Below the pieces are notes generated by a model, which saw only the letters and a list, made by a program, of their open reading frames with translations, was not told where the DNA came from and searched no databases. 64,000 nucleotides of DNA, from the IMG/VR virus record IMGVR_UViG_3300034117_001294, positions 62,001 through 126,000 of that record; one strand, written 5' to 3'. Shown here in pieces: positions 10,837 through 55,747 of the stretch (within the stretch, counting starts at the first letter, position 1; every line of letters begins with the position of its first letter). The position numbers and the translations under genes were made by a program.

Positions 10837-11484
10837 ATGAAACCTACCGTTGCCCTGTTTTTGTATGATCCTAAATGTAGCGTACAGTCAGGCAATGGAG
10901 TTATACGATCATTACAGTCACATTATAACTTTAAAATATTCAGCATCAATCCCTTAGAAGATAACTTCTTTGATGATGTAGACATGATAGTTATTCCTGG
11001 CGGCTTTGGTGATGCTAGTACATTTGACCGTGCATTTAAATATACTAAAGATAGAGTTAAAACATTTGTAAGCGGTGGTGGTAAGTATTTAGGTATATGC
11101 ATGGGTGCGTATTGGGCCGGCCAACACTATTTTGATATACTGGACAGCGTTGATGCTGTTCAATACTCAACGCAACCCAATACAGATACACGCAGACCAC
11201 ACGCTAAAAATATCAGTATAACTTGGAAAAACCAGCCAATGAATATGTTTTGGTATGATGGTTGTGCTTTAGTAGGTAACTCTGCTAAGTTTAACACCAT
11301 TGCCACATATGCAAACGGAGACGCTATGGCTATTATACAAAACAATATCGGTGTAATAGGTTGCCATCCAGAAAGTGAAAACTATTGGTACGATAGCTAC
11401 TCATGGATGGCGGGCAAGTATCACAATGGACAACATCACCGTCTGCTTTTAGACTTTGCTAACCAACTAAATACTGGATGTTGA
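10837..11484 (+). CDS. class I glutamine amidotransferase-like (BPL_N-type) protein
   Basis: IPGG, YLGICMGAY nucleophile elbow, HPE. Confidence 0.8.
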   Translation: MKPTVALFLYDPKCSVQSGNGVIRSLQSHYNFKIFSINPLEDNFFDDVDMIVIPGGFGDASTFDRAFKYTKDRVKTFVSGGGKYLGICMGAYWAGQHYFDILDSVDAVQYSTQPNTDTRRPHAKNISITWKNQPMNMFWYDGCALVGNSAKFNTIATYANGDAMAIIQNNIGVIGCHPESENYWYDSYSWMAGKYHNGQHHRLLLDFANQLNTGC

Positions 11485-13532
11485 AAAAAATCCTAACAAG
11501 TCCATGGACAGCATTGCTGACATTGGCACTTATTTTAAGTATAAGAATTGCTGATCCTGTCTTTGTAGAAAGTATAAGACTACGCTATTTTGATACGCTG
11601 ATTACATCTAAAGAAACTACTGTTAACAACATTGTTACAGTAAACATTGATGAAGGGAGCTTAGACAAATATGGACAATGGCCGTTACCTCGTGTTGAGT
11701 ATTCCCGACTTATACGAGATTTATATCAGAGGGGAGCGGGCCTTGTGGTACTTAACGTACTCATGCCAGAAACAGATCGTACAGGTGGTGACAGTCAACT
11801 GGGTAAAGCTCTAAAAGAATACCCAGTTGTATTAGGCAGCATTCCTGCACAGAAAACAAAGAACGAACCACGCAATCCCGGTTCGGCAGTATTAGGTCCT
11901 GAGTACTTGGATCAAATTATACAGTATCCGGGTTTGATTGCCAACGTACCTGTGTTAGAGAACGCAGCAGCAGGTGTTGGTATCGTAAACACACTGCCAG
12001 AAGTAGATGGTGTTAATCGCAGATTGCCGTTAATTGTCACAGTTGACGGTAAGTTATATCCTAGTCTAGCTATGGAAACACTCCGCGTAGCGGCAGGCGA
12101 TTCAACATTCCAAGTCAAGCTATTTGAAGGTGGAGTTGAGAAGATGCGTATACCTAAGTTTGGTCCTGTAGCAACAGATAACTTAGGTCGCATATGGATT
12201 GATTGGAGTCAGGCAAGTCACAGCGTTAGTGCAGTAAACCTGCCAAAAGATCTAGCAGGTGCTATTGTTATCGTAGGCCCAACAGCCGCAGGTATTGCTA
12301 ATCCATTACCCACTAGTAAGGGTGCAGTATTTCCACACGAAGTACAGGCCGCAGTAATAGGCACAATGATGAACAATGTAACTATCCAGCGTCCGGATTA
12401 CGCAGATGGTGTGGAAATTATTGTACTGTTAGCAGCAGGCGTACTATTATTATTTTTAACAAGGTGGGTATATGTTGGACTTGGAACAGTGGTTGCTCTT
12501 TCTATGGGTGGTGTTGCTGTCAGCATGTATGCTTATAGCCAGTATCTTTATCTGTTTGATGCTACTGCTTTTGTCAGTGGCATATTGCTTGTGGCATTAC
12601 ATGCATACGGAGTTAAATTCGTAAGCGAGTTTTTACAGAAGCAGGCAATCAAGAAACAGTTTGCAGGTTACGCTAGTCCTACAGTGGTTAGATTACTGCA
12701 AGAAAATCCAGACCTTATTAAGAAGGGTGTTAAGAAAGAAGTCAGCATACTGTTTTCAGACTTACGTGGCTTTACACCCCTAGGTGAAAGCTTTGGTGAT
12801 GATGTTGCGGGGCTTACACGTATAATGAACGGCTACATGGACGCTATTACGCAACCTGTATTAGATGCAGACGGAATGATTATCAAGTACATCGGTGATG
12901 CCAGTATGCACATACACAATGCACCCATTGAAGATCTTAATCACCCGTCAACAGCAGTTCGCACAGGATTAAAGATGCTTAGAGCTGTAGATACTTTTAA
13001 CCGAGACGTGATTGTTCCGCAAGGCAGACCACCAGTTGGTATGGGTGCAGGCATTAATACAGGATTGGGCTACATCGGTGAGATGGGCAGTACAGCTCGA
13101 CACAGTTACGATGTACTAGGCGATGCCGTTAGCACAGCCGCACGTATCGAAAGCAAGTGTAAAGAATACGGTTGCCTGTTATTAGTAGGTGGAGCAACCG
13201 TTCAACGATGTGCTGACGAGTTCTTCTTCCTTAAGATTGACGACCTAGCAGTTAAAGGTAAGAGTGTAGGAGTTGCTATCTATACAGTACTTGACCCTGA
13301 CGTAACTGTTGCCGCAGAATATTTGTTAGCACAAGAAACTCATAATGAAATGCACTCATGTTATAGACAGCAGAAATGGGACGATGCCATTACACTGTGT
13401 GAAGAACTGAAAGATGAGTTCGACGGGCAAATGAAAAAATACTACAGCATGTGGATAGAACGCTGTGAGTTTCAAAAGACTCAAATACTTCCAGCCGACT
13501 GGAATGGCGTATTCATAGCCACAAGCAAGTAA
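11478..13532 (+). CDS. CHASE2-domain class III adenylate/guanylate cyclase
   Basis: IDEGSL..YGQWPLPR CHASE2 motif, TM helices, FSDLRGFT, KYIGDA, GDAVSTAARIES. Confidence 0.92.
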   Translation: MLKKILTSPWTALLTLALILSIRIADPVFVESIRLRYFDTLITSKETTVNNIVTVNIDEGSLDKYGQWPLPRVEYSRLIRDLYQRGAGLVVLNVLMPETDRTGGDSQLGKALKEYPVVLGSIPAQKTKNEPRNPGSAVLGPEYLDQIIQYPGLIANVPVLENAAAGVGIVNTLPEVDGVNRRLPLIVTVDGKLYPSLAMETLRVAAGDSTFQVKLFEGGVEKMRIPKFGPVATDNLGRIWIDWSQASHSVSAVNLPKDLAGAIVIVGPTAAGIANPLPTSKGAVFPHEVQAAVIGTMMNNVTIQRPDYADGVEIIVLLAAGVLLLFLTRWVYVGLGTVVALSMGGVAVSMYAYSQYLYLFDATAFVSGILLVALHAYGVKFVSEFLQKQAIKKQFAGYASPTVVRLLQENPDLIKKGVKKEVSILFSDLRGFTPLGESFGDDVAGLTRIMNGYMDAITQPVLDADGMIIKYIGDASMHIHNAPIEDLNHPSTAVRTGLKMLRAVDTFNRDVIVPQGRPPVGMGAGINTGLGYIGEMGSTARHSYDVLGDAVSTAARIESKCKEYGCLLLVGGATVQRCADEFFFLKIDDLAVKGKSVGVAIYTVLDPDVTVAAEYLLAQETHNEMHSCYRQQKWDDAITLCEELKDEFDGQMKKYYSMWIERCEFQKTQILPADWNGVFIATSK

Positions 13533-25389: not shown

Positions 25390-25587
25390 TTTGTAAGTGT
25401 CAGCAAGAGAAAGACTCGCTAGGAAGATTCTTCGAAGGTCAACCTAGTGTTAAAGTAGGGCGGGTTCGAGTACCGTAAATGCAATGGTGCACCTATGTCA
25501 AGTATTCCAAGTGACTTACCTCCTCCCGTCCGGACTTGCATGAATCGGGTGAATGGTTGCGATTACAGAGGTGCAACTACTTACAAA
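25390..25587 (+). ncRNA. CAGCAA-clamp variant RNA
   Basis: TTTGTAAGT-GTCAGCAA ... ACTTACAAA, internal hairpins. Confidence 0.5.
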
Positions 25588-26135: not shown

Positions 26136-26195
26136 TAGGATCGGTTCAGCAAACAAAAAGCTAACTTTTGGTGTCTAGCGACAAAAACGATCCTG
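26136..26195 (+). ncRNA. CAGCAA-clamp RNA 1 (TTG anticodon-like loop)
   Basis: TAGGATCG-GTTCAGCAA...CGATCCTG; inner hairpin loop TTTTGGT. Confidence 0.7.
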
Positions 26196-26913: not shown

Positions 26914-26976
26914 TAGGATGCGTTCAGCAAACTTTATACATTCAACTTTTAATTGAAAACGTAAAAAAGCATCCTG
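26914..26976 (+). ncRNA. CAGCAA-clamp RNA 2 (Lys TTT anticodon stem-loop)
   Basis: TAGGATGC-GTTCAGCAA...GCATCCTG; TTCAA-CTTTTAA-TTGAA. Confidence 0.75.
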
Positions 26977-27811: not shown

Positions 27812-27850
27812 CCTAATAAGTTTTTGCCACATTGTGGCACCAATAAATAC

Positions 27851-27942
27851 GGAAAGTAATGCAGGGGAGTTGGTTCCCCGACCAGCCTTGAAAACTGGGT
27901 TCTCAGAAATGGGATGGGGTTCGACTCCTCTGCTTTCCACCA
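27851..27942 (+). tRNA. tRNA-Ser(TGA), 8/4-type fold with long D stem
   Basis: GGAAAGTA/TGCTTTCC, CTTGAAA loop, 4-bp T stem. Confidence 0.7.
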
Positions 27943-27947
27943 ATAAT

Positions 27948-28460
27948 ATGAACGAAGATTATTTTATCCCTGTTAACACTGACATTAATTTTTTACCTAA
28001 AGTAAAAGAATTTATTCCGAATGCAATTTGGAAATGGGTTCCGTCTATGTTTATTGCTACAAATTTATCTAGTACGCACATCGGTGATGATCAATTACTG
28101 AGTAAAATTCATAAGGAATTTTTAGGAGAGTTAAATCTTTATAAAATTCCATGTAAATCTGTCTATGGATGGCACCAGGATAAAAATTCAATAGGGTGTT
28201 CATTAAATATGGCATTAGATCGATATCATTGTCATACATTGTTTTCAGTTGGGAATCACGGAACTCCTTTCTTACAAAAAGTAATTGAACTTGAGTACGA
28301 TCCTAATACATGGTATGCATTTAATTCAAAACAGGTGCATACTGTAATAAATCTAGACGAAAAAGATAGATATCTACTTTCATATGTACTACCGGGAATT
28401 TTTTCCTACACAGATCTAAAATCTTGGTTAGTACAGCATACATATACTTCTCTGATGTAA
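27948..28460 (+). CDS. 2OG-Fe(II)/cupin-like oxygenase
   Basis: WHQD...SLN...VHTVIN...RYLLS; start moved to ATG 27948 after the tRNA. Confidence 0.65.
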   Translation: MNEDYFIPVNTDINFLPKVKEFIPNAIWKWVPSMFIATNLSSTHIGDDQLLSKIHKEFLGELNLYKIPCKSVYGWHQDKNSIGCSLNMALDRYHCHTLFSVGNHGTPFLQKVIELEYDPNTWYAFNSKQVHTVINLDEKDRYLLSYVLPGIFSYTDLKSWLVQHTYTSLM

Positions 28461-28519
28461 TGGCAGCATAGCGGTCTCCAAAACCGTTCGTTGGGGTTCG
28501 AGTCCCTAGGGGAGTGCCA
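28446..28519 (+). tRNA. tRNA-Trp(CCA)
   Basis: CTCCAAA loop, GCCA. Confidence 0.88.
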
Positions 28520-28524
28520 GTTTA

Positions 28525-28639
28525 AGGATACATACAGCAATGTCTAACGACACGTTGGTTCGATTCCAACATTATCCGCTTTGGATGATTCGCTCAATGG
28601 TAGAGCAATGGGCTTCATGCCCATCGAAACTGTATCCTG
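28525..28639 (+). ncRNA. CAGCAA-clamp RNA 3 containing a circularly permuted tRNA (TCA anticodon)
   Basis: order T arm, closed acceptor, D arm, anticodon arm inside AGGATACA/TGTATCCT. Confidence 0.75.
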
Positions 28640-28648
28640 TTTTATTAT

Positions 28649-28726
28649 GTAGGGGTTCCAGAGAGGCTTAATGGCACTGATTGCAAACCAGTTGATTCGT
28701 GGGTTCAAATCCCACTCCCTACTCCA
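28649..28726 (+). tRNA. tRNA-Cys(GCA)
   Basis: TTGCAAA loop, U73 CCA. Confidence 0.88.
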
Positions 28727-28825: not shown

Positions 28826-29395
28826 ATGTATTTTGTTAAATTAAAAGAACAATTTTTTCTAACACTAGATGCAAATATTGCAAAAGAAGAATTTGCAAAT
28901 TTTGGATCTGTAATCGGCAATGAATTTAAAGGTATACAATATAATAGAATACCGCAGTATTGTACTGATACTATGTTAGAAGTCGTTCCGGAAAATTATA
29001 GAAAACATTTTACATCGGGCATTATGAAAATTAATGTACCGTATGCAAGACCACACACTGATAGCGGAGTAACCGCAGTATTAAATTTTTATGTACAGAC
29101 TGCTGATGCTGTGACAGTATTTTATAATCAGCTTACTGAAGATTCGGTTTTAACAAAGATAAAAAATCAAACTAACGGAAGTGTCTTTAAATTAAAAGAT
29201 CTAGTTCCTGCTGCAAATTTTAAAGCATTGCCGGGAGACGTTTGGTTACTGGATGTAACGAAGCCGCATTCTGTTATTGCTGCATCCGCAGTTGATAGAG
29301 TAGCATTCTGTTTACACACTAACAGTTTATCTTTCGAAGAAGTCAAAAAAATATTTGAATGCCCGGGTGGTGGAATGGTAGACACACTTTACTGA
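28826..29395 (+). CDS. 2OG-Fe(II)/cupin-like oxygenase
   Basis: PHTD...LNFY...PHSV...R; 3' end runs into a tRNA. Confidence 0.65.
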   Translation: MYFVKLKEQFFLTLDANIAKEEFANFGSVIGNEFKGIQYNRIPQYCTDTMLEVVPENYRKHFTSGIMKINVPYARPHTDSGVTAVLNFYVQTADAVTVFYNQLTEDSVLTKIKNQTNGSVFKLKDLVPAANFKALPGDVWLLDVTKPHSVIAASAVDRVAFCLHTNSLSFEEVKKIFECPGGGMVDTLY

Positions 29396-29446
29396 GGTAA
29401 GGAAAAACACTAGGATGTGAGAGTTCGAATCTCTCCTCGGGAACCA
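29361..29446 (+). tRNA. tRNA-Leu(GAG), degenerate anticodon arm
   Basis: Leu-type D arm, CTGAGG loop, T arm, CCA. Confidence 0.6.
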
Positions 29447-31405: not shown

Positions 31406-31469
31406 TAGGATCAGTTCAGCAAACATAATAAAAATTTCATTTATACTGAAACATAAAAAGTTGATCCTG
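31406..31469 (+). ncRNA. CAGCAA-clamp RNA 4 (TAT anticodon stem-loop)
   Basis: TAGGATCA-GTTCAGCAA...TGATCCTG; TTTCA-TTTATAC-TGAAA. Confidence 0.72.
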
Positions 31470-31478
31470 TTATTTTAT

Positions 31479-31570
31479 GCCCCTGTAGTTTAATGGTAGA
31501 ACAGCGGATTTATATCCCGTATGCAACAGATAATTGGTTAGTGTGGGTTCGACTCCCGCCGGGGGTACCA
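31479..31570 (+). tRNA. tRNA-Ile(TAT) with long variable region
   Basis: TTTATAT loop, CCA. Confidence 0.75.
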
Positions 31571-31728: not shown

Positions 31729-31789
31729 TAGGTTAATTACAGCAATAAAAAATGGCTGTCTGCTAGGACTTTAAACTAGTATTAACCTG
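31729..31789 (+). ncRNA. CAGCAA-clamp RNA 5
   Basis: TAGGTTAA-TTACAGCAA...TTAACCTG. Confidence 0.7.
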
Positions 31790-32081
31790 TTGAAAACCCG
31801 GTTTACTGTTTTACGTTATTAAAACAGCGTCCCTGAAACGATAGAACAGGGGGTACACTAGGACCTGACCTTACAGTCTTCTGTTCGGAGATACTGAAAA
31901 CTGCCTAGGGGCGGGAACAAAACCCGTCCAGATGGAAAAATTAGTGGACAGAGTAACCGCTCAGTTTGGGGCTCATGTGGTGTGAGTGGCTAGACACTTT
32001 ATTGAAATGCATTAGGTATCGTATCAAGTAGTGTAACTACTTTGCCAGCGGTGTTAGTGTGTTTCAATAAATAGATTTAAT

Positions 32082-32806: not shown

Positions 32807-32924
32807 TAGGTTCTTTTCAGCAATTAAAAATAATCTTTCTGTAAAAAAGAGGGGCTGGGTTCGAATCCCGGGCGTGAGTTGGTCTTCACGTTGGTGTAGT
32901 GGTAGCACGTAAAAAGAGAACCTG
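32807..32924 (+). ncRNA. CAGCAA-clamp RNA 6 containing a circularly permuted tRNA (GTA anticodon)
   Basis: order anticodon arm, T arm, closed acceptor, D arm inside AGGTTCT/AGAACCT. Confidence 0.75.
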
Positions 32925-32955
32925 TTTAACTTTAACTTTAACTTCAAGGAAACAC

Positions 32956-33183
32956 ATGGCACGTTTAACGTCACAAGCAGCGGTAGAGATGGTAGGTAAT
33001 CGTTTTGATCTAGTATTGATTGCATCAATTCGTGCTAGAGAATTAAAGCGTGGGCATATGCCTATGGTTACCTGTAATAACGGATTCAACGTCACTGCAC
33101 TTCGAGAAATTGAAGCAGGTAAAGTGGGACGTGATTATTTGGAAAAGCTTCGCAAGCCTCCTAAAAAGAGTGAACACTATTAA
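32956..33183 (+). CDS. rpoZ: RNA polymerase omega subunit
   Basis: MARLT...VGNRFDLVLIAS.RAREL...ALREIEAG; SD before ATG 32956. Confidence 0.85.
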   Translation: MARLTSQAAVEMVGNRFDLVLIASIRARELKRGHMPMVTCNNGFNVTALREIEAGKVGRDYLEKLRKPPKKSEHY

Positions 33184-40495: not shown

Positions 40496-41003
40496 TAGGT
40501 TAGGTACAGCAACATTCATTAACTATGAACTGTTAGACACTGTGGTAGAAACTGGAGCAGAGTGCGTAAAAACACCGAGCGTTGAAGGGGTCTATTGAAG
40601 CAAGACTAACGAGCACAGAGTGATGGCCTGTGTAAAATAAAAGCAGTCAACAACTAACCTGTTAAATCCTAGGATGGATTCAGCAACTTAAACAATAAAC
40701 TCTGAACTAACTGCTATAGAAGATGGTCGCAGGACACAGTAGAAATACTGTTCTAGGAAACTAGACTCGAAGGAATAGACGACACATTGGAAAGACTTTG
40801 TATGATGATTGTACAGACACAACACAATCTAGGCGACATGAATTGTATGCTAGGCTTGCGAGACTTGAACCGATATACTGGGGATGGGGGTAAGCAGAAA
40901 ATAAAAATCCGTCTCAGCCATCCTGTTGTAGTTAGGTTAATTACAGCAATTTTAAATTGTATCATTAAAACCCGTGGGAACAACAAAGCCCACATTTAAC
41001 CTG
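40496..41003 (+). ncRNA. three tandem CAGCAA-clamp RNAs (40496-40661, 40670-40925, 40933-41003)
   Basis: TAGGTTAG/CTAACCTG, TAGGATGG/CCATCCTG, TAGGTTAA/TTAACCTG, each with WCAGCAA. Confidence 0.75.
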
Positions 41004-41015
41004 AAGGAAAAGAAA

Positions 41016-42431
41016 ATGAACGCATTTGTAGAAGCCGTTAAAAACCAAGAAGCCCGTACTGCCAATGGCATGAAGGCTCGCAAATCTACTGCCAACGCAG
41101 TAGTTGATCTGTTCTTCAAGATCGGTGCAAGCCGTGGTAAGGACATCACTAAGGACTTTGTTGCCGCGTATGTGGAAGACAAAGATCTAGCCCTGCGTGT
41201 TGCACAATGGGCACGAGACGTTCGTGGAGGTTCCGGTGAACGTGAACTGTTCCGTAGCATCTTAAAGTATCTGGAAAAGCACGATCCAGCAGCCGCAGAA
41301 GTGCTGATGGACAAGATCCCAGAACTTGGTCGTTGGGACGACTTGTTTGTATTTGAGTCCAAAGCATTGAAGGCTAAGGCTTTCACACTGCTAGGCGATG
41401 CACTTCGTGCTCGCAATGGCTTGGCTGCAAAGTGGACTCCTCGTAAGGGTAAAGTCGCCGCAGAAATCCGTGATTTCTTTGGTATGACTCCTAAGCAATA
41501 CCGTAAGTCATTGGTAGCAATGACTACAGTTGTTGAAACACAAATGTGTGCCAACGACTGGGATAACATCAACTTCAACCACGTGCCATCCGTTGCGGCA
41601 GCACGTTACAAGAAGGCCTTCGGCCGTCATACTGAAAAGTTTGCGGAATACGTGGCTAAATTGGCTAAGGGTGAAGCAGGTGTCAAGGTTAACGCCGGAG
41701 CTGTTTACCCATACGATGTCTTGAAGGGCGTGATCAACCACTACGGTGGTGTCAAGTTCAACAAGACAGAACTGGACCACATTGTAGCACAGTGGGAAGC
41801 ACTGCCTAACTTTGTCGGTGATGCTAGCATCCTACCATTGGTAGACGTTAGCGGCTCTATGAGCACACCAGCAGGTAAGGGAAGTTCTTTCTCTTGTATG
41901 GATGTTGCTGTCAGCTTGGGCTTGTACCTTGCTGATAAGAACAAAGGTGTGTTCAAGGACACATTCCTAACATTTAGCGGTTCACCAGAACTGTTGACTC
42001 TGAAGGGTAATGTGGTTCAAAAGGCTGAACAAATGGTTAAGTCTAAGTGGGATATGAACACTAACTTGGTTAAGGCTATGGACAAGATCCTTAGTGTAGC
42101 TGTTAATGGTGCTGTTCCACAAGAAGACATGCCAAAGATGCTGTTGATCTTGAGCGACATGCAGTTTGACGCCTGTGCAAAGTACGATGACTCTGCTATG
42201 CAGATGATCAAGCGTAAGTTCACAGACGCCGGATACGATGTTCCAAACATTGTATTCTGGAATTTGAACGCTAGCGACAACGTGCCTGTCAAATATGACA
42301 CACGTGGAGCGGCATTGGTTAGTGGTTTTAGCCCAAGCATCGTGAAAGCGGTCTTGAGTGCGGACACTGAACAATTCACTCCAGAAGGCATTATGATGAA
42401 AACCATCATGGTTCCACGCTACGATCTGTAA
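41016..42431 (+). CDS. DUF2828-type helical + VWA protein (Ro60/TROVE-like architecture)
   Basis: RDVRGG.GER, GRWDDL, AKWTPR, MIDAS DVSGSM, SDMQFD, WNL; SD AAGGA before ATG 41016. Confidence 0.78.
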   Translation: MNAFVEAVKNQEARTANGMKARKSTANAVVDLFFKIGASRGKDITKDFVAAYVEDKDLALRVAQWARDVRGGSGERELFRSILKYLEKHDPAAAEVLMDKIPELGRWDDLFVFESKALKAKAFTLLGDALRARNGLAAKWTPRKGKVAAEIRDFFGMTPKQYRKSLVAMTTVVETQMCANDWDNINFNHVPSVAAARYKKAFGRHTEKFAEYVAKLAKGEAGVKVNAGAVYPYDVLKGVINHYGGVKFNKTELDHIVAQWEALPNFVGDASILPLVDVSGSMSTPAGKGSSFSCMDVAVSLGLYLADKNKGVFKDTFLTFSGSPELLTLKGNVVQKAEQMVKSKWDMNTNLVKAMDKILSVAVNGAVPQEDMPKMLLILSDMQFDACAKYDDSAMQMIKRKFTDAGYDVPNIVFWNLNASDNVPVKYDTRGAALVSGFSPSIVKAVLSADTEQFTPEGIMMKTIMVPRYDL

Positions 42432-43463: not shown

Positions 43464-44891
43464 ATGAGAAATATAATATTTTGGAGCGGTGTCTGGCCGA
43501 ATTTTACTTACGAAAAACTGCCAACTATGCAGCGTCCAATGGCCGCATATGCGTTAGCTCATTGGATGCGGAAGAATCGATTTCAATGTCAGGTTATAGA
43601 TTTCTTACAACATTTTACTGCTAAAGAAATTATTGAATTTACAGAGCCTTTAATAACTAAAGACACTGTTTGTATTGCACTCACTACAGTATTTTGGAAC
43701 GCAGATAGTTCTTATCCGCCCGGGGCTATTATGATAGCAATACAGTATTTTAAAAAGAAATTTCCAAATCTTCCAATTGTAGGAGGTGGGCCGTACTCTA
43801 ACAATTACAAGATGTTAGATCGTGCATTTGTCGGGGAAGGTGAAGACCAATTTCTAAAATGGTGTCAAGAACAGAGTATGGGAGTAGCATTGCCAAATTC
43901 TGTTTTTGATATAACTCAAAACGATCATACATTTCACGAAGATGATTGTATTATGCCCGATGAAGCAGTTCCTATAGAATTAGGTCGAGGGTGTATTTTT
44001 AAGTGCAGTTTCTGTACGTATCCAAATCTAGGTAAATCTAAAGGGTCATATATTAGGAAACCTGAATACTTATTAAATGAAATGCTACGAAACAGAGATG
44101 TATTTGGAACTACTAACTATGTTTTCTTAGACGATACCTGCAACGAAGATCAAGATAAGATAGCTGAGATTGCTAATATAAACAAACAACTTGATTATAA
44201 AATTAGATGGTCTGGCTTTGTACGTGCAGATTTGATATGGAGCCATGAAAATCACAATCTAATGTTGGAAAGCGGAGTAGACCAGGTATACTTTGGCATG
44301 GAGAGTTTTCATCCAGAAGCTGCTCGAAAGGTAGGAAAGGGATGGAATGCTAAACACGGAAAAGATTACTTACCTAAATTACACAATGATCTCTGGAAAA
44401 ATCAAGTAGGTATCGAAGCAAGTTTTATTTCAGGACTACCTGGAGAAGATATACCCCATCTTAGATCAACAGTAGATTGGATTAAAGAGAATAATTTTAT
44501 AAGAGGATATTTTCGAGGACTTGTCATATTGCCAAAATCTGAGTTTGCAAATAATCCCGAAAAGTTTTTTCTAAAAAAGAAAGCATATTGGAAAAATTCT
44601 GACGATCAATCTGGAGATGCAGAAGTCATGGGGTGGGAAGATACTAGAGACCCCAAAAATAATCACGAACTGCACGAAGCACTATCACACGAGTTTAATG
44701 ATATCTTGCAACCGACTTGGCCTATGACTGGATTTTATACTTCTTCGCTTTATTCATTAGGGTATACTAAGGAAGAAATTAAACAATACGGTTGGAAAGA
44801 TTGGGCTATGTTAGTAATGGCAAGGAAAGATCCTTTTATTTCTACATATAAAGAAAAATTAAAAACAATAATAAATCGAGGATGGAGATGA
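43464..44891 (+). CDS. B12-binding radical SAM protein
   Basis: RGCIFKCSFC, DDTCN, FGMES. Confidence 0.85.
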   Translation: MRNIIFWSGVWPNFTYEKLPTMQRPMAAYALAHWMRKNRFQCQVIDFLQHFTAKEIIEFTEPLITKDTVCIALTTVFWNADSSYPPGAIMIAIQYFKKKFPNLPIVGGGPYSNNYKMLDRAFVGEGEDQFLKWCQEQSMGVALPNSVFDITQNDHTFHEDDCIMPDEAVPIELGRGCIFKCSFCTYPNLGKSKGSYIRKPEYLLNEMLRNRDVFGTTNYVFLDDTCNEDQDKIAEIANINKQLDYKIRWSGFVRADLIWSHENHNLMLESGVDQVYFGMESFHPEAARKVGKGWNAKHGKDYLPKLHNDLWKNQVGIEASFISGLPGEDIPHLRSTVDWIKENNFIRGYFRGLVILPKSEFANNPEKFFLKKKAYWKNSDDQSGDAEVMGWEDTRDPKNNHELHEALSHEFNDILQPTWPMTGFYTSSLYSLGYTKEEIKQYGWKDWAMLVMARKDPFISTYKEKLKTIINRGWR

Positions 44892-45514
44892 ATTTAAAAG
44901 ATATTATACTAATGCCTATTGATTTGCCTAAGTTAAATTTAGATAGACAGAAAGTTTTGGAATACTTTGACGCAAGAAAGCTACCTCATCAAGACTGGGC
45001 TTGGGTAAATTTTAAACCAATGAACAAGCCAATAGACCCGGATCTGCTAAAGTTGTTTCCCGACCTTGATGAAAAATTAAGAGCATTGCCGCTGTTAGAT
45101 TATGAAAATAATGGACATTTTGATTTTAGAGAGCAGATAGTCAATAATAAGCCGCACCAAGATCCAATAGCTAAATCGTTAGCTGATGGAGAATTAGGAC
45201 CCACTGCTTATAAAAATTTAGTAATGCGTGACATGTTAGAAACATTCTATGTGCTGCCAACGTCATCTAATCCCGATATTGTACAATACGATCAAAGACC
45301 TAGAAACTTATTATCACCTGTGTTTCCTGTACTACCCAATGACACTGATTGGTTTGTATTAAACAACCATGTAGGCTATCATGGATCTTTCATAGCACCT
45401 GCAGAATATAGAAAAATTACCATGTTCATTGCAGGAAGATTAGATACTGATAAACATTTAGAACTTATGTCTAGAAGTATTGAAAAGTACAAAGATTACA
45501 TTATCTATAATTAA
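44882..45514 (+). CDS. hypothetical, possible cupin/2OG-like protein
   Basis: PHQD...YHGS...RK. Confidence 0.45.
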   Translation: MEMNLKDIILMPIDLPKLNLDRQKVLEYFDARKLPHQDWAWVNFKPMNKPIDPDLLKLFPDLDEKLRALPLLDYENNGHFDFREQIVNNKPHQDPIAKSLADGELGPTAYKNLVMRDMLETFYVLPTSSNPDIVQYDQRPRNLLSPVFPVLPNDTDWFVLNNHVGYHGSFIAPAEYRKITMFIAGRLDTDKHLELMSRSIEKYKDYIIYN

Positions 45515-46119
45515 TGCAGAATATACTTTCAACTCCGTTACACATGCCCAGGATTGAACCAATTAATTGGGATAATTGGTGGTCACTATGGTATAAAGAA
45601 TCTAAGCCTGTACAAAAAATACAAACTAATCACAATACTAATGCTGCACCATGGAGAGGTTTTGATATCTGGGTAAAGCCCGGAGTTGACGCAGAAGAAA
45701 CTACAAAATACAAATCTAAAAATTTAAACTGTCCAGAACTATTTCCATCTATCTTTGATAATCTAGACAAGTTTCCTATTGATATAGAAGTAGTAAGATT
45801 TGTTTCTAGCATGGGAGCAGTACTTCCGCACACCGATTATGATTCAGAAAGTTTAAGTGTAAGGTCGCTAGTATATGATAATAATGTGCGTCCTAATTTT
45901 TATTACCTAAAAGATACTAAAAGAGAATATCAACTATTACCTTCGGATACAAACACTTGGGCTTATTGGGACCACAAAAGAAAACACGGAACTGATTGGT
46001 ATTTTGGACACAGTAAAATTTTAATCACATATTTTGGAAAACCAAAAGAAGATGCATATCAAAGCATCATAACCGAGAATGCAAAACGGTATCAAGAATA
46101 CGTTATTTTTGCAGATTAA
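45514..46119 (+). CDS. hypothetical, possible cupin/2OG-like protein
   Basis: PHTD...KHGT...K. Confidence 0.45.
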   Translation: MQNILSTPLHMPRIEPINWDNWWSLWYKESKPVQKIQTNHNTNAAPWRGFDIWVKPGVDAEETTKYKSKNLNCPELFPSIFDNLDKFPIDIEVVRFVSSMGAVLPHTDYDSESLSVRSLVYDNNVRPNFYYLKDTKREYQLLPSDTNTWAYWDHKRKHGTDWYFGHSKILITYFGKPKEDAYQSIITENAKRYQEYVIFAD

Positions 46120-47557
46120 ATTTATTTTTAAAAAATTCTAATTTTTTATATTTGTAAACGTCTACAAATTTAGCGGCTTTGTTTATAAGATCAGGAACAT
46201 CTAAATTATTTTTATTCTCTTTTAGTAATTGATCTATATCGTATCCGTGTACAGTAATTGAAAATGCTGACCACGGATTTATCTTTTTGTTATTGTATCT
46301 TTTTGCGTTGAGCTCTGCTGATAGTTTTTCAGAAGTATATGTATTAAAATGTTTATTTTCCCAAATAATACGTATATCATCTTCTTCAATTTTTTTGTAT
46401 CCGTACAATCTCCAGTTATCTGCAAAATATGAAGTTAGTACCATTCCGCTTTTTGCAGGGATATTCAATGGATATGTTGACCATGCATCTAATACCATTG
46501 AAGTATCACACCAATTAAATGTATCTTCTAAACATTGTGCATCCTCGTATGGTAGCCCAACAATAAAACTAGAATGTAAGAACAAGTTAGGATGTTTTTG
46601 TTTAACACTAGTTAAATATTCTTTCATTTTAGATCCGCTAAATGCTTTTCCTATTAGTTTACTAGCTTCGGGATGGAATGTTTCTATTCCAAAATGCATG
46701 GCTTTAAATCCTGCTTCTACTAGTTTATCAACAGTAGTGCCTCTGGCATGCATTAAATCAGCTCTAATGAACCCCATGATAGACAATTTAAAAGGAAGTT
46801 GTTTGGATATTCTTAATAAGCTATCGACTTTTAATTCATTATCGTTAAATGTATCATCTGAGATAATGTAGTGTGTTGTTCCCCATTGATTGTAATTTCT
46901 GATAAGTTCTTTTAATATATCTTCATCTTCTCTAAGATAATCGTTTTTATTTTTGCCTATTAACGGAAAATCACAAAACTTACATTTAAAAATACATCCT
47001 CTAGAGTATTCTAATACTAATGTCTCATTAGGGGAAATAAAATCGCTAGCTTGATATATAGTCTCTAATTTTTGATTGTTTACCAATGGATATGTATGCG
47101 TGACTTTTACAGTAGGCTTTCCATTAAACGATTCAATTTGCATAGAATGTACTTGATCTTCTACAAATCTAACGATATCGTCTATTGCTTCTTCAACAAA
47201 TCCTTCTGTATATAAGTCGGCCCCGGGTGCGTCCTTTGCATAGACATTAGTTCCGCCGACTATAATTTTTGCCCACGGTAAATTTTTTCTTATAAATTTA
47301 ACTACTGAATCTATTTTGCCTTTAGGATAATAAGTGATGCTGGCACTAAACCCTATAAATTTTAAATCGTTATCATACAGGCTTAGTATTTGAAATATTT
47401 CATCTAGACTAAAACTTAAAAAGAAATCAACTACTTCTGTGTCAATACCTTTTTTTCTCAGTAACGTAGCAACTCTATGAGCCCCAGTTGTCCTAGCAAT
47501 TCCTACTCTGTGTATACCTGCGGGGATAAAATTATCCCCAAATATAATTGCCTTCAT
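46103..47557 (-). CDS. B12-binding radical SAM protein
   Basis: SRGCIFKCKFC, DDTFND, FGIET. Confidence 0.85.
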   Translation of the reverse strand: MKAIIFGDNFIPAGIHRVGIARTTGAHRVATLLRKKGIDTEVVDFFLSFSLDEIFQILSLYDNDLKFIGFSASITYYPKGKIDSVVKFIRKNLPWAKIIVGGTNVYAKDAPGADLYTEGFVEEAIDDIVRFVEDQVHSMQIESFNGKPTVKVTHTYPLVNNQKLETIYQASDFISPNETLVLEYSRGCIFKCKFCDFPLIGKNKNDYLREDEDILKELIRNYNQWGTTHYIISDDTFNDNELKVDSLLRISKQLPFKLSIMGFIRADLMHARGTTVDKLVEAGFKAMHFGIETFHPEASKLIGKAFSGSKMKEYLTSVKQKHPNLFLHSSFIVGLPYEDAQCLEDTFNWCDTSMVLDAWSTYPLNIPAKSGMVLTSYFADNWRLYGYKKIEEDDIRIIWENKHFNTYTSEKLSAELNAKRYNNKKINPWSAFSITVHGYDIDQLLKENKNNLDVPDLINKAAKFVDVYKYKKLEFFKNKFNLQK

Positions 47558-48312
47558 TTAGAAATAGCTTTAATCACAATACCTGCAGGATCAATCTCCC
47601 ACCACTTTTCGTGAGTAGTAGCTGATTTAGGATTACCGTGATGATTATTATGCCACGCATCTCCCATAATTAAAGGCCATAGTAATGCGTTATTAGTGCT
47701 AGTGTCAGTTGTTTTGTAGTTCCTATATCCGTAACTATGACCAACATAATTAAAGATATTCTGACTCATCTGTACTAGAAAGACGGGAACTATCCATGTA
47801 AAGTAAACGAGATTGATATCTATCATTGCTAGAATGGATAACCATACAATAATTATTGCATAGTAGTATTCGTTGATGAACACTTGCTCTTTATTCATTA
47901 AATCTTTTATCATGAACACGTTAACTTTACCGCTGTTAGATTCAATATGTTTAAAGCCGAATGGTTTAAATCCTATTGTTTTAGGTCCATGGGGATCTTT
48001 ATCAGTGTCCGAATATGCATGATGCAATCGATGAACATATACCCAACCTAGTACACTTGCTCTACCAGCCAGTATTGCAAACAATGTAAAGAGCCATTTA
48101 ATTGCAGGATGAATAAATTCAAATGATTTGTGAGTATAGTATCTGTGCAGTGTAATACCAATACCAAAAACTCCGTATACATAAAACGATGCTAATATTA
48201 AGAACATATTAGTCATTGTAAAATCAAAATAAAACAGTCCAATAATTGATAAAATTCCTGTAGTAATTTGTACCTTGGTAATAGTATCTGCAGATGCGGA
48301 GAAGATTTTCAT
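47554..48312 (-). CDS. membrane fatty-acid (delta9-like) desaturase
   Basis: HRYYTH, HRLHH, WHNNHH. Confidence 0.9.
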   Translation of the reverse strand: MKIFSASADTITKVQITTGILSIIGLFYFDFTMTNMFLILASFYVYGVFGIGITLHRYYTHKSFEFIHPAIKWLFTLFAILAGRASVLGWVYVHRLHHAYSDTDKDPHGPKTIGFKPFGFKHIESNSGKVNVFMIKDLMNKEQVFINEYYYAIIIVWLSILAMIDINLVYFTWIVPVFLVQMSQNIFNYVGHSYGYRNYKTTDTSTNNALLWPLIMGDAWHNNHHGNPKSATTHEKWWEIDPAGIVIKAISK

Positions 48313-48345
48313 ACTGGTATTTATTTGAAGGATAAGTACGTTGAT

Positions 48346-48918
48346 ATGATAAAGATATTAGGCCCCGAACACTTTGATGCCTGTTTAAAAATCAAACAGT
48401 TACGACCAAAAATTGGCGGAACAGTGGCAATTAGTGACCAATCATTTATAGAAGGATATCAGAAGTTCTTCGAATCAAATGATACAAATTTTGCAATTGG
48501 CTATTTTGAAAATAATGATTTAGTGAGTTGGATATCGATGGGAATATATGACAGTAGCTTACGAGGAAAATTTTGGGTAGTCCCTTGTTTTTTTTCTAGC
48601 CGGCAACAATCGTATTTTAGTTTTAACCATCCAGATTTGAGTATGATGATTAAAGAAGCATTTGCAATTGCAGAGTCTAAAAATTGTTATACATACTACT
48701 ATGCAATATCTGAAAAGATATCAAGAGTATACGACAAACAGTGGCAAAAGAATTCTTTTATGCAGGTAGGAAGGTATCACTTATCAACATTAGATGTTGT
48801 CCCCCCAAATACTAAACCCGATCAATCACTGTATTGGAAGTTAATGGGGGAAGAATTAAAACCCGATGCAACACTAATTAAACAGCGAGTTCTTAAATTA
48901 GAATTTAGATCACGTTAA
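48346..48918 (+). CDS. hypothetical GNAT-like protein
   Basis: resembles 55123-55740; start at ATG 48346. Confidence 0.45.
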   Translation: MIKILGPEHFDACLKIKQLRPKIGGTVAISDQSFIEGYQKFFESNDTNFAIGYFENNDLVSWISMGIYDSSLRGKFWVVPCFFSSRQQSYFSFNHPDLSMMIKEAFAIAESKNCYTYYYAISEKISRVYDKQWQKNSFMQVGRYHLSTLDVVPPNTKPDQSLYWKLMGEELKPDATLIKQRVLKLEFRSR

Positions 48919-49842
48919 AATATTAAACATTTCTTCGTGAGTTCCAATAAACGACAACTCACTGGTCCCGTACTGTTTCTTCAGCTTGTGTTGATATTCT
49001 TTTAACAAATGCCACACTGCATCGGGAGCACCGATCTTAGGACGAGGATCTTTTTTCATTATCTTAAATTTGTTTTCTTCGCTGTTTAACGACATATCTC
49101 TTTCTTTAATGTAAGCAAGAACAATCTCAGGATTCCAGCTTAAAAAGTTATAGGTATGATAACCAGGATTATACATATCTACATAGAAGTCGTCTTCGTG
49201 TAATAACCAACCTGATTTTTTTGTACCGTCTTCATTAAAAAATCCAGAGTCATTAACAATATCTATCAAATACTCTAATGTGTAGTCGGGATAATATTCA
49301 GGAAATGCTTGACCGTTTATCACAACACCGTCGTGTTGCACTGCAAACTCTGACAATATAATATTTTGTGCAGGGTATAATTTTCTTCCTTTAATTTTAT
49401 CAATTAATGGCTTAATATCTGCAAACATTTCCAACGTAGTTGTATTTTTTACAATCGGAGTGATATTATGTTTTTTGCACCAACGATACGCCCACCAAGA
49501 ATCTGCATAAGTTAGTTGAAGTCCCAATGACCAAACTTCGTGTATTATAGGAGTGAACGGAATCTTTAACTGCAAAAAGGTATCTGCAACTGTTTCGCTA
49601 TCACACCCACCACTCATTGGAACAAATATAGTTTGGTGTCTATTAAGTTCATAAAGCTCTTCTGCTACTAATTTACAAGCAGTATTAAATGTAGGAGCAG
49701 ATGTTGCTTTCTTTGTAAATGTTACTTCAAAATTATCTTTGGGATTTACTCTAGTTCGATTTCCGTTAAAATGATATTTGATCCAATTATCCTGGCCTAT
49801 GCCATTAACATCTAAGTTAAATTTATTCCATTTGCTTGTCAT
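48910..49842 (-). CDS. PP-loop protein
   Basis: PMSGGCDS. Confidence 0.5.
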   Translation of the reverse strand: MTSKWNKFNLDVNGIGQDNWIKYHFNGNRTRVNPKDNFEVTFTKKATSAPTFNTACKLVAEELYELNRHQTIFVPMSGGCDSETVADTFLQLKIPFTPIIHEVWSLGLQLTYADSWWAYRWCKKHNITPIVKNTTTLEMFADIKPLIDKIKGRKLYPAQNIILSEFAVQHDGVVINGQAFPEYYPDYTLEYLIDIVNDSGFFNEDGTKKSGWLLHEDDFYVDMYNPGYHTYNFLSWNPEIVLAYIKERDMSLNSEENKFKIMKKDPRPKIGAPDAVWHLLKEYQHKLKKQYGTSELSFIGTHEEMFNILT

Positions 49843-50704
49843 GTAGCCAGTCTCTAAAATGTTGTTTAGATTTCTCTAAGTTGTCTTGATTAAATTCGGT
49901 TAATAATTCAGCTTGCTGTTTATCTTGCTTCCATGCAAGTTCCCAAACTTCTTCATTAATTTTCCAATTCGTGTCATTATATCTATTGTCTCTGTATTTA
50001 AAAACATGCACCTTTGCCTGAGACGAAGTTTGATTTGTAGCAACTGTGATAAACAACGCACCCGGTTGCCACTCAATCATTGTTCCTGGATATATAGAAA
50101 GCCATGCTGCCCTATAAGGATTATTTTTATCTTCGTCTAGTAATGTACCCGCAAATTCAGGACACTGACTATCATTCTTTACTAATTGAAGATTACCAAA
50201 CGAATAATATTTCCAAATGACATCGGTGGATAATTTAAATCCTATTCGATCATAAACACCTGAATGTACTATTGGAATATGGTCGACATCTAAAAATAGA
50301 TCCATGACGTTTTTAAAATTACTGTTAACAGTATCTACCCGTTGCTCTACTAGACTAAAATTTTTAAAGTCAATAAAATTCAAATCTTCGCATTCAACTT
50401 GATTAGAAAATATTAATTCCTTCCAGACAAATGCATCTGTATTTGTTAATGCAGTGTGATTTGGACAGAGTCTATTAGCACGCTCTGTTACTATCACCGT
50501 GCCGGCAAAGTCGAAACTTAGACCGTGATACGGACATACTCTAATGCCTTGCTGTTCTGTTGTAGAGATTAAACTCTTTTGATGCGGACAAATATTGCTT
50601 TGCATATAAGGAGAGTCTGTATTGACCAACACTAATTTATTGTCGCACTGAGATAGTGGACGCAACCCGTCCTTATGTATATCTGACCTATGTGCTAGAA
50701 ACAT
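49823..50704 (-). CDS. Rieske non-heme iron oxygenase
   Basis: CPH...CPYH, D.DH..IVH, QD. Confidence 0.8.
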   Translation of the reverse strand: MFLAHRSDIHKDGLRPLSQCDNKLVLVNTDSPYMQSNICPHQKSLISTTEQQGIRVCPYHGLSFDFAGTVIVTERANRLCPNHTALTNTDAFVWKELIFSNQVECEDLNFIDFKNFSLVEQRVDTVNSNFKNVMDLFLDVDHIPIVHSGVYDRIGFKLSTDVIWKYYSFGNLQLVKNDSQCPEFAGTLLDEDKNNPYRAAWLSIYPGTMIEWQPGALFITVATNQTSSQAKVHVFKYRDNRYNDTNWKINEEVWELAWKQDKQQAELLTEFNQDNLEKSKQHFRDWLHDKQME

Positions 50705-50705
50705 C

Positions 50706-52142: not shown

Positions 52143-52143
52143 T

Positions 52144-53022: not shown

Positions 53023-53023
53023 C

Positions 53024-54515: not shown

Positions 54516-54516
54516 G

Positions 54517-55740: not shown

Positions 55741-55747
55741 GTCTTAT

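What the first reader, a model, noticed from the sequence alone, without database searches (positions are those of the whole stretch)
28525..28639. Circularly permuted tRNA with a UCA (opal-reading) anticodon
Seen in order: T arm GTTGG-TTCGATT-CCAAC, acceptor hairpin ATTATCC-GCTTT-GGATGAT, D arm GCTC-AATGGTA-GAGC, anticodon arm ATGGG-CTTCATG-CCCAT, with the clamp at the variable-loop position. All four arms have canonical spacing. End-joining plus opening of the acceptor loop would give a UGA-decoding tRNA; otherwise it is an unchargeable mimic. TGA is used as a normal stop codon in this window.
Basis: partly seen in the sequence, partly recalled or inferred. Interest (0 to 1): 0.8.

Follow-up and report, generated by a model that had tools for sequence, protein, structure and literature searches.

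The report
Phage tRNA-mimic Y-like RNA, not suppressor
The "permuted opal tRNA" is real and conserved, but it is a tRNA-shaped non-coding RNA of the Y-RNA (YrlA) kind, one of at least nine RNAs in this phage's tRNA array that share a stem-plus-CAGCAA module found next to a Ro60-like protein gene in many phages; it is very unlikely to decode UGA.

Summary
At 28525-28638(+) an 8-bp terminal stem encloses a small hairpin, a T arm, a closed 7-bp acceptor-like hairpin, a D arm and an anticodon-like hairpin. Twelve distinct orthologues keep this fold: 97.8% of cells are paired and 9 pairs change on both sides.

The decoding interpretation fails. The "anticodon" loop varies in length (6 or 7 nt) and in sequence, UCA occurs only in this phage population, and the acceptor hairpin loop carries no conserved NCCA.

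The best Rfam match is YrlA, full length but below threshold. The terminal stem is a module, A-R-R-N4 / 3 nt / CAGCAA ... complement / G. It occurs 9 times on the + strand of the tRNA region, against about 0.1 expected by chance.

The last three copies end 14 nt before a DUF2828/DUF7788 gene. Its predicted structure matches only Ro60/TROVE proteins over its full length. The same motif flanks this gene in 10 of 10 phages of diverse hosts and in 75 of 80 IMG/VR loci.

Most likely this is a phage Y-like RNA that binds the Ro-like protein and displays a tRNA body. I found no paper that describes these RNAs.

The parts
28525..28639 (+). Whole element: a Y-RNA-like tRNA mimic lying between tRNA-Trp and tRNA-Cys
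   Evidence: Fold; Rfam YrlA 25.9 bits, E 6e-4, model 1-114; 12 orthologues and covariation
28525..28532 (+). 5' strand of the terminal stem (AGGAUACA)
   Evidence: Pairs with 28631-28638. Pair 4 changes A-U to C-G in 3 orthologues; pair 8 changes A-U to U-A in L086
28533..28540 (+). Conserved single-stranded UACAGCAA motif; candidate binding site for the Ro-like protein
   Evidence: CAGCAA is invariant in the orthologues and in 42 motif instances from 11 phages
28541..28552 (+). Small hairpin in the variable-arm position (the V arm of YrlA)
   Evidence: helix 2, 97.8% paired
28554..28570 (+). T arm, GUUGG-UUCGAUU-CCAAC
   Evidence: Invariant in 12 orthologues
28571..28589 (+). Closed acceptor-like hairpin, 7 bp, loop GCUUU
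   Evidence: 6 of 7 pairs change on both sides among orthologues; the loop is unconserved at 4-5 nt
28592..28606 (+). D arm, GCUC-AAUGGUA-GAGC, carrying A14, G18, G19 and A21
   Evidence: Invariant in 12 orthologues
28608..28624 (+). Anticodon-like hairpin, 5 bp, loop CUUCAUG
   Evidence: The stem covaries at 2 pairs. Loop length and sequence are not conserved. The hairpin is absent from the other tRNA-like family members
28631..28638 (+). 3' strand of the terminal stem, followed by GUUUU
26137..26194 (+). Short paralogue with the stem + CAGCAA module
26915..26975 (+). Short paralogue
31407..31468 (+). Short paralogue
31730..31788 (+). Short paralogue
32808..32923 (+). Paralogue with a classical YrlA-type module (V, T arm, acceptor hairpin, D arm; no anticodon hairpin)
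   Evidence: orthologues with a covarying acceptor hairpin in L123, L125, L126, L135 and BUCT-ZZ01
40497..40660 (+). Long paralogue upstream of the Ro-like gene
40671..40924 (+). Long paralogue upstream of the Ro-like gene
40934..41002 (+). Paralogue in the 5' leader of the Ro-like gene; the Shine-Dalgarno sequence follows its 3' strand directly
41016..42431 (+). Gene for the Ro60-fold protein (DUF2828 + DUF7788, phrog_850 'RNA-binding protein'); the proposed protein partner
   Evidence: MIDAS DxSxS motif; AF2 model pLDDT 92.6; top five Foldseek hits are all Ro60/TROVE
28446..28519 (+). Upstream tRNA-Trp; its CCA end lies 5 nt before the element
28649..28726 (+). Downstream tRNA-Cys; starts 10 nt after the terminal stem

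Best explanation
The element is a phage-encoded Y-RNA-like non-coding RNA of the YrlA kind. It is probably transcribed within the polycistronic tRNA array and released when the flanking tRNA-Trp and tRNA-Cys are processed (inferred).

Its paired ends, together with the adjacent single-stranded ACAGCAA, form a module shared by at least nine RNAs of this phage. That module is proposed to be the binding site of the phage's Ro60-fold protein (DUF2828/DUF7788), whose gene lies in the same array (inferred from synteny and co-occurrence; binding was not shown).

The interior folds as a tRNA body with an intact T-loop/D-loop elbow, a closed acceptor stem and, unusually, an anticodon-like hairpin. In this way the ribonucleoprotein displays a tRNA shape to tRNA-recognising factors. 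Candidates are RNase P, CCA-adding and modification enzymes, exonucleases, and host tRNA-targeting defence nucleases (inferred).

It does not act as a UGA-decoding tRNA.
For: 1. The structure is real and under selection. z = -4.05. In 12 distinct orthologues 97.8% of cells are paired, against 88.0% in shuffles and 33-39% for slid partners. Nine pairs change on both sides.
2. The T arm, D arm and V hairpin are invariant, while the acceptor hairpin covaries freely. This is the pattern of a fold mimic.
3. The best Rfam family is YrlA, matched over its full length. YrlA has the same order, V-T-acceptor hairpin-D, inside a terminal stem (PMC4201824).
4. The strict stem + CAGCAA + G motif occurs 9 times on the + strand of the tRNA region and 0 times on the - strand. 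Shuffles give a mean of 0.77 for the whole window and 0.07 for the region.
5. Three copies abut the DUF2828 gene.
6. The DUF2828 protein has a Ro60 fold. The AF2 model has pLDDT 92.6 and pTM 0.91. The top five Foldseek hits are all Ro60/TROVE over about 500 columns, E 1e-8 to 1e-6. It has a MIDAS DxSxS motif. Mycobacteriophage annotators call it 'Ro-like RNA binding protein'.
7. The motif lies 2-5 times on the gene strand within 6 kb of this gene in 10 of 10 phages, whose hosts are Synechococcus, E. coli, Mycobacterium, Vibrio, Listeria, Campylobacter, Bacillus, Sinorhizobium, Staphylococcus and Enterococcus. Shuffles give 0.04-0.32. In 80 IMG/VR loci there are 216 copies on the gene strand, 11 on the other strand, and 2.7 in shuffles.
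8. The tRNA region of T5, which has no such gene in the 50 kb examined, has none.
9. tRNA-like family members in Enterococcus phage EA1 and mycobacteriophage LeBron hit YrlA at 47.8, 35.8 and 39.8 bits.
10. Canonical phage Ro60 binds Y-like RNAs encoded upstream of its gene (PMC12135203).
Against: - No binding or expression experiment exists. RNA-library contigs do contain the element, but they could derive from DNA.
- The Rfam YrlA score (25.9) is far below the gathering score (69).
- The Ro-binding motif of YrlA (GNCGAA) is absent.
- The element lies 12.4 kb from the Ro-like gene, not within 4 kb.
- My motif scan demands perfect complementarity, so complementarity of the stems among paralogues is true by construction. 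Only the enrichment over shuffles counts as evidence.
- The 80 IMG/VR loci are related phages, not independent samples.
- There is only one negative control, and it covers part of a genome.
- Another protein could be the real partner.
Confidence: 0.72

Rival explanations
1. Two-piece, CCA-tailed tRNA-like RNA. RNase P cuts the acceptor-hairpin loop 5' of G28583, the 5' piece is trimmed and receives CCA, and the terminal stem holds the halves together. This could coexist with the Y-RNA role. In its strongest form the molecule is charged and reads UGA.
For: M. smegmatis YrlA, which also has a 7-bp acceptor stem, is cut by RNase P at the equivalent site and gains CCA in vivo (PMC4201824). Here the stem is 7 bp in 11 of 12 orthologues. 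In the window the cut site reads U|G and the 3' strand is followed by GC. The terminal stem sits where class II tRNAs carry a long variable arm.
Against: The loop after the 3' strand is unconserved (GCUUU, UGAU, UUUU, UUCAU, GUUU, GAUUC). One orthologue has 8 bp, and one has C at +1. The anticodon-like loop is 6 nt in most orthologues and no anticodon is conserved. Position 37 is U here. TGA ends 14 of 52 ORFs, and nothing suggests recoding.
Confidence: 0.15
2. A true circularly permuted tRNA gene, as in Cyanidioschyzon merolae: the ends are joined through a circular intermediate and the acceptor loop is then opened to give a normal tRNA(UCA).
For: The 3' half precedes the 5' half with exact tRNA spacing.
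Against: The ends carry no bulge-helix-bulge motif. Instead there is an 8-bp stem flanked by single strands of 8 and 6 nt. Bacteria and phages are not known to have the splicing endonuclease this needs (established knowledge). No RtcB-type ligase was seen among the window ORFs scanned. No 28638-to-28525 joint appeared in four RNA libraries (contigs only). The anticodon is not conserved. The same terminal module closes eight other RNAs that have no tRNA parts or only partial ones.
Confidence: 0.02
3. The stem + CAGCAA modules are punctuation or processing signals, or binding sites for some other factor, in the tRNA-array transcript. The tRNA-like interior is a stable by-product, and the Ro-like protein is not the partner.
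For: Four of the nine copies start 5-8 nt after a tRNA 3' end, and three end 10-12 nt before the next tRNA. No binding data exist.
Against: In Listeria, Campylobacter, Staphylococcus, Enterococcus, Sinorhizobium and LeBron phages the copies cluster immediately next to the DUF2828 gene, rather than being spread through the tRNA genes. T5's tRNA array has none. The arrangement copies the known Ro60/Y-RNA synteny.
Confidence: 0.12
4. A decayed remnant of two tandem tRNA genes: the 3' half of one and the 5' half of the next.
For: Tandem tRNAs give weak hits to both the YrlA model and my own model.
Against: The two 'halves' pair with each other and covary at 6 of 7 positions. The terminal stem and CAGCAA are conserved. 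Twelve orthologues keep every helix.
Confidence: 0.01

Closest known systems
YrlA, the bacterial and mycobacteriophage Y RNA with a tRNA-like domain (Rfam RF02553; Chen et al. 2014, PMC4201824)
   Same: A terminal 5'/3' stem with a single-stranded protein-binding motif just inside the 5' strand. The interior order is V hairpin, T arm, closed acceptor-like hairpin, D arm. The T and D loops are conserved. It is encoded on the same strand as a Ro60-fold gene and has several paralogous RNAs per locus.
   Different: The motif is ACAGCAA, not GNCGAA. The partner gene is DUF2828/DUF7788, not a Pfam TROVE protein. An extra anticodon-like hairpin moves the terminal stem from the anticodon-stem position to the variable region. 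It lies inside a tRNA array, 12 kb from the gene. Its Rfam score is below threshold.
Yrl1/Yrl2 of Thermus phage phiLo, bound by phage Ro60 (PMC12135203; PDB 9KOP, 9L5Y)
   Same: Phage-encoded Y-like RNAs next to a phage Ro60-fold gene. 9KOP is the best structural match of the window protein.
   Different: The phiLo protein is a recognisable TROVE protein, its RNAs carry the CGAA motif, and the paper describes no tRNA-like domain.
[quoted passage not shown]
   Same: A 7-bp closed acceptor stem, which is the determinant the authors give for cleavage.
   Different: Processing was not tested here, and the loop sequence is not conserved among orthologues.
Circularly permuted tRNA genes of Cyanidioschyzon merolae and some other algae and archaea (from my own knowledge)
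   Same: The 3' half is encoded upstream of the 5' half.
   Different: Those have a bulge-helix-bulge junction, a conserved functional anticodon and a circular intermediate. None of these is found here.
Phage T5 'tRNA-like stable RNAs with unknown functions' (RNA1, RNA2) in its tRNA region (annotation of NC_005859)
   Same: Small stable RNAs with tRNA-like parts, interspersed among phage tRNA genes.
   Different: No stem + CAGCAA module, and no DUF2828 gene in the 50 kb examined.
Bas63 gp130, a Ro60-like counter-defence protein (bioRxiv 10.1101/2024.10.10.617714)
   Same: A Ro60-like phage protein encoded directly upstream of a run of tRNA genes. The authors guessed that some of those 'tRNAs' are Y RNAs. 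In the Felix O1-like phage HY02, four CAGCAA RNAs lie in exactly that position.
   Different: The RNAs were not identified in that work. That gp130 is the DUF2828 orthologue is my inference and was not tested.

Membership tests
YrlA / bacterial Y RNA (RF02553) | Reaches the Rfam gathering score | tested here: not met
   25.9 bits against 69, E 6e-4, full-length match 1-114
YrlA / bacterial Y RNA (RF02553) | tRNA-like domain in the order V, T arm, closed acceptor-like stem-loop, D arm, with tRNA-like T and D loops | tested here: met
   definition from PMC4201824
YrlA / bacterial Y RNA (RF02553) | GNCGAAN0-1G motif near the 5' end (proposed Ro60 contact) | tested here: not met
   The 5' side carries UACAGCAA instead. 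A CGAAAC on the 3' side is not conserved among orthologues
YrlA / bacterial Y RNA (RF02553) | Encoded within about 4 kb of a Ro60 orthologue, on the same strand | tested here: inconclusive
   Same strand, but 12.4 kb from a Ro60-fold gene that Pfam files as DUF2828, not TROVE. Three paralogues lie within 520 nt of it
YrlA / bacterial Y RNA (RF02553) | Bound by Ro60/Rsr in vivo | not testable with these tools
   Needs immunoprecipitation or a gel-shift assay
Circularly permuted tRNA gene | 3' half upstream of the 5' half, with all four arms | tested here: met
Circularly permuted tRNA gene | Bulge-helix-bulge motif where the transcript ends pair | tested here: not met
   An 8-bp stem with unpaired stretches of 8 and 6 nt inside it
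Circularly permuted tRNA gene | Canonical 7-nt anticodon loop with an anticodon conserved among orthologues | tested here: not met
   Loops of 6 or 7 nt with eight different sequences
Circularly permuted tRNA gene | Circular or end-joined RNA intermediate | tested here: inconclusive
   No back-joint at 28638/28525 in four RNA libraries, but these are assembled contigs and cannot show absence
Canonical (suppressor) tRNA | Called by tRNA finders; free 5' end and 3' NCCA end | tested here: not met
   ARAGORN makes no call. Rfam tRNA scores 19.2 against 29, and only by mis-pairing the ends. The acceptor stem is closed by a loop
Two-piece (permuted) tmRNA | tRNA-like domain plus a tag reading frame; detected by ARAGORN or Rfam | tested here: not met
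   No tmRNA call in the window
Ro60/TROVE protein (for the proposed partner, 41016-42431) | Matches the Pfam TROVE domain | tested here: not met
   Pfam gives DUF2828 + DUF7788 only. A family profile hits the vWA region of Ro60/TROVE chains only weakly, E 0.05-0.2
Ro60/TROVE protein (for the proposed partner, 41016-42431) | Helical-repeat ring plus vWA domain with a MIDAS motif | tested here: met
   AF2 pLDDT 92.6. Foldseek top five are 9kop, 1yvr, 2nvo, 9l5y and 9nfa, TM 0.48-0.60 over 504-558 columns. D277-S279-S281, T349 and D381 are invariant

The most novel reading that the evidence does not exclude
The stem + CAGCAA RNAs are the so far unidentified RNA subunits of a Ro-like ribonucleoprotein encoded by more than 700 sequenced phages. 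This member, the only type that carries a full tRNA body including an anticodon-like arm, would serve as a bait or decoy for host tRNA-targeting defence nucleases. Alternatively, after RNase P opening and CCA addition, it would become a chargeable two-piece tRNA-like molecule.
Probability: 0.15. Interest if true: 0.85.

Novelty: new variant of a known kind. Interest (0 to 1): 0.62.

Why it matters
Ro60-fold 'RNA-binding proteins' of the DUF2828 type are encoded by at least 711 phage records of hosts from many phyla. One was reported as a counter-defence factor whose RNA partners were only guessed at. A simple, searchable RNA signature next to these genes makes the partners directly testable. 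They fall into short forms, tRNA-mimicking forms and, here, a form with a complete tRNA body. The result also warns annotators that tRNA-shaped sequences inside phage tRNA arrays need not be tRNAs or suppressors.

Tried and rejected
- Megablast of the region against the phage collection found nothing.
- The 21-nt pattern GTTTAAG-N6-TACAGCAA gave mostly chance hits in prophage contigs. Only L010, L028, L086 and L121 were relevant.
- The plain MAFFT alignment A1 put the anticodon-like arm out of register. I rebuilt the alignment through covariance model R1.
- Second-tier hits of R1 and weak YrlA hits include tandem tRNA pairs. These mimic the T-acceptor-acceptor-D order and were discarded.
- A single-sequence search of the DUF2828 protein against PDB sequences gave only spurious hits.
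- No sigma-70-type promoter or intrinsic terminator flanks the element on the + strand.
- RNA libraries were available only as assembled contigs, so RNA ends and circular forms could not be read.
- The review PMC10870794 is not held.

Full report
**Context.** The window comes from a large freshwater phage. Twenty lake-water DNA runs hold 76-96% of the sampled words of the region, and identical stretches lie on IMG/VR contigs of up to 228 kb. ARAGORN finds 38 tRNA genes between 24.5 and 40.4 kb, all on the + strand. The finding lies in the 129-nt gap between tRNA-Trp (ends 28519) and tRNA-Cys (starts 28649).

**The observation.** The minimum-energy fold of 28520-28648 reproduces these helices, in order:
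- an 8-bp terminal stem
- a 4-bp hairpin
- the T arm
- a closed 7-bp acceptor-like hairpin
- the D arm
- an anticodon-like hairpin

The fold has an energy of -40.5 kcal/mol and z = -4.05, and none of 200 shuffles folds as well. ARAGORN does not call it. Rfam's tRNA model scores only 19.2 bits.

**Orthologues.** A composite pattern (CAGCAA, T loop, D arm) retrieved 18 IMG/VR loci, which give 12 distinct versions. I built covariance model R1 from seven of them and realigned all twelve.

On that alignment 97.8% of pair cells are standard pairs, against 88.0% for shuffled partners and 33-39% for slid partners. Nine pairs change on both sides: six of the seven in the acceptor hairpin, two in the anticodon-like stem and one in the terminal stem. 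The T arm, D arm, V hairpin and CAGCAA never vary. The alignment was fitted to the model, which favours pairing, but the changes on both sides are visible in the raw sequences.

**Why it is not a decoder.**
- The anticodon-like loop reads CUUCAUG only in this phage population. Elsewhere it is UUACAC, UUCCAA, UUACAA, UUCACA or UUCAUC (6 nt), or UUAAACA or UUAAAAA (7 nt). A tRNA family keeps its loop length and anticodon; this one keeps neither.
- The acceptor hairpin loop is 4-5 nt and unconserved, and one orthologue has 8 bp.
- TGA ends 14 of 52 long ORFs, and the ORFs are intact under the standard code.
- Four RNA libraries hold contigs with the element. One 213-nt contig spans 28459-28645 with 7 differences, and one matches 28535-28611 exactly. 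The neighbouring stretch 28000-28399 has zero depth. No contig joins 28638 back to 28525. Because these are contigs, they prove neither transcription nor the absence of a circle.

**What it resembles.** The best Rfam hit is YrlA (Y RNA-like), matched from model position 1 to 114 at 25.9 bits and E 6e-4, below the gathering score of 69. Chen et al. 2014 describe YrlA as a Ro60-bound RNA. Its ends pair, it carries a short motif (GNCGAA) near the 5' end, and its interior mimics tRNA in the order V, T, acceptor-like stem-loop, D. The M. smegmatis YrlA, which has a 7-bp acceptor stem, is cut by RNase P in that loop and receives CCA in vivo.

**The terminal stem is a repeated module.** Scanning for a 7-bp stem, then 1-4 nt, then CAGCAA, then the complement within 300 nt followed by G gives nine hits. 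All are on the + strand between 26.1 and 41.0 kb. There are none on the - strand. Shuffles give a mean of 0.77 for the whole window on both strands, and 0.07 for the tRNA region.
- Five hits are short (58-69 nt).
- Two are long (164 and 254 nt).
- Two are about 115 nt and tRNA-like. These are the finding, and 32808-32923, which has V, T, acceptor hairpin and D but no anticodon hairpin. The latter is conserved as far as Synechococcus phage BUCT-ZZ01, with a covarying acceptor hairpin.
- Three copies (40497-41002) run up to 14 nt before the ATG at 41016.

**The gene at 41016.** It encodes a 471-residue protein that Pfam files as DUF2828 + DUF7788 and PHROGs as phrog_850 'RNA-binding protein'.
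- An 86-sequence alignment shows an invariant MIDAS DxSxS motif.
- The AlphaFold model is confident (pLDDT 92.6, pTM 0.91).
- Its five best PDB matches are all Ro60/TROVE proteins aligned over 504-558 columns, with E from 1.4e-8 to 9.9e-7 and TM 0.48-0.60: Thermus phage phiLo Ro60, Xenopus Ro, Deinococcus Rsr and human Ro60. Everything below them is an isolated vWA domain.
- Sequence profiles only graze the Ro60 vWA region.
- Homologues occur in 711 phage records. In cluster L mycobacteriophages they are annotated 'Ro-like RNA binding protein'.

**Co-occurrence.** I fetched 6-15 kb on each side of this gene in ten phages whose hosts are Synechococcus, E. coli, Mycobacterium, Vibrio, Listeria, Campylobacter, Bacillus, Sinorhizobium, Staphylococcus and Enterococcus. 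Each has 2-5 strict motif copies on the gene strand and 0-1 on the other strand. Shuffle means are 0.04-0.32. In most, the copies lie directly upstream or downstream of the gene.

In 80 IMG/VR loci encoding relatives of 64-100% identity, there are 216 copies on the gene strand, 11 on the other strand, and 2.7 in shuffles. Seventy-five loci have at least one copy. In four of the other five the gene lies within about 80 nt of the locus start, so little or no upstream sequence is held; in the fifth the contig ends about 1.2 kb downstream of the gene.

T5, whose tRNA array carries annotated 'tRNA-like stable RNAs', has no copy in that array and no homologue of the protein in the 50 kb examined.

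Over 42 instances the consensus is A-R-R-N4, 3 nt ending mostly in A, CAGCAA, a variable interior, the complement, then G followed mostly by U.

tRNA-like interiors (V-T-acceptor-D) recur in HY02, LeBron, Enterococcus EA1 (two) and Bacillus FADO. Three of these hit YrlA at 35.8-47.8 bits. None has the anticodon-like hairpin, which is therefore special to the finding's orthologue group.

**Mechanism.**
- Shown: a conserved, covarying fold; a repeated terminal module; a Ro60-fold protein gene in tight synteny with that module across phyla.
- Inferred: the protein binds the stem/ACAGCAA module, as Ro60 binds Y RNAs, including in a phage. The RNA is cut out of the array transcript by processing of the flanking tRNAs. 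The tRNA body engages tRNA-recognising factors.
- Neighbouring genes fit an RNA-end-healing or tRNA-related setting: a P-loop kinase (AAA_33), a calcineurin-like phosphoesterase, a DSP-type phosphatase, an HD hydrolase and a partial QueC-like ORF (its match covers only the C-terminal 60 residues of the QueC profile). This is circumstantial.
- A preprint reports that a Ro60-like protein encoded directly upstream of the tRNA genes of phage Bas63 counters the Ppl defence system, and guesses that some of those 'tRNAs' are Y RNAs. In the related phage HY02, four CAGCAA RNAs lie in that position.

**Novelty.** Full-text searches found no paper that links DUF2828 proteins to specific RNAs or that describes this motif. 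The kind is known: Y RNA with a tRNA-like domain, and phage Ro60 with Y-like RNAs. Three things appear new. The first is the partner family. The second is the binding-module signature and its breadth. The third is a member with a full set of tRNA arms, whose terminal stem leaves from the variable region instead of replacing the anticodon stem.

**Limits.**
- There are no wet-lab data.
- There is one negative control.
- The IMG/VR loci are related to each other.
- E-values from R1 are rough.
- That Bas63 gp130 is the DUF2828 orthologue is inferred, not tested.

Noticed in passing
window 27851-27943 (+): An uncalled class II tRNA-like gene. It has an 8-bp acceptor stem, a long variable arm and an encoded CCA. 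Rfam tRNA-Sec scores 35.6 bits (gathering score 47, E 2.4e-5). By my manual parse the anticodon loop reads CUUGAAA, i.e. UGA, Ser rather than Sec. It is present in RNA-library contigs. It overlaps the start of ORF 27834-28460, which therefore looks doubtful.
   Followed up: partly
window 31795-32081 (+): An unannotated, non-tRNA stretch covered by contigs of three RNA libraries (depth 32-114 at 31800-31999). It folds only moderately better than shuffles (z -2.25), and nothing in it matched any Rfam family at E up to 1.
   Followed up: partly
window 40934-41002 (+): The last stem + CAGCAA copy lies in the leader of the Ro-like gene, with the Shine-Dalgarno sequence directly after its 3' strand. 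This suggests possible autoregulation by the protein. A similar arrangement is seen in BUCT-ZZ01 (L002:14846-14906, gene at 15010).
   Followed up: no
window 25390-25587 (+): A 198-nt element with a 9-bp terminal stem and GUCAGCAA, but without the AGG...CCU-G signature. It may be a divergent tenth family member.
   Followed up: no
window 29361-29446 and 31479-31570 (+): ARAGORN reports a tRNA with a two-base 'anticodon' (ga), which Rfam tRNA scores at only 34.7 bits, and a 92-nt tRNA-Ile(tat). Both are odd members of the array.
   Followed up: no
window 32899-33183 (+): A small ORF matching RNA polymerase Rpb6/omega (PF01192, E 8.5e-13). Its listed GTG start overlaps the tRNA-like RNA at 32808-32923.
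   Followed up: no
window 11478-13532 and 43464-57649: A CHASE2-adenylate/guanylate cyclase gene, and a run of four radical SAM proteins of which two (46103-47557 and 55748-57649) also carry a B12-binding domain. Both are unusual cargo for a phage.
   Followed up: no
L002:10789-11085 (Synechococcus phage BUCT-ZZ01): A permuted tmRNA (RF04321, 111.9 bits) in the tRNA array, not annotated in the record.
   Followed up: no
L141:4471-5022 (Listeria phage WIL-1): A ROOL-like RNA (RF03087, 87 bits against gathering score 99.1) about 1 kb upstream of the Ro-like gene. RtcB-type and Rnl-type RNA ligase genes lie just downstream of that gene.
   Followed up: no
L001:665-735 and 1053-1180 (Vibrio phage phi-ST2): KVP40-like phages carry the same kind of RNA after tRNA-Trp (short form) and after tRNA-Gln (with a T arm). 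The blastn match from the window extends past tRNA-Trp into the module.
   Followed up: partly
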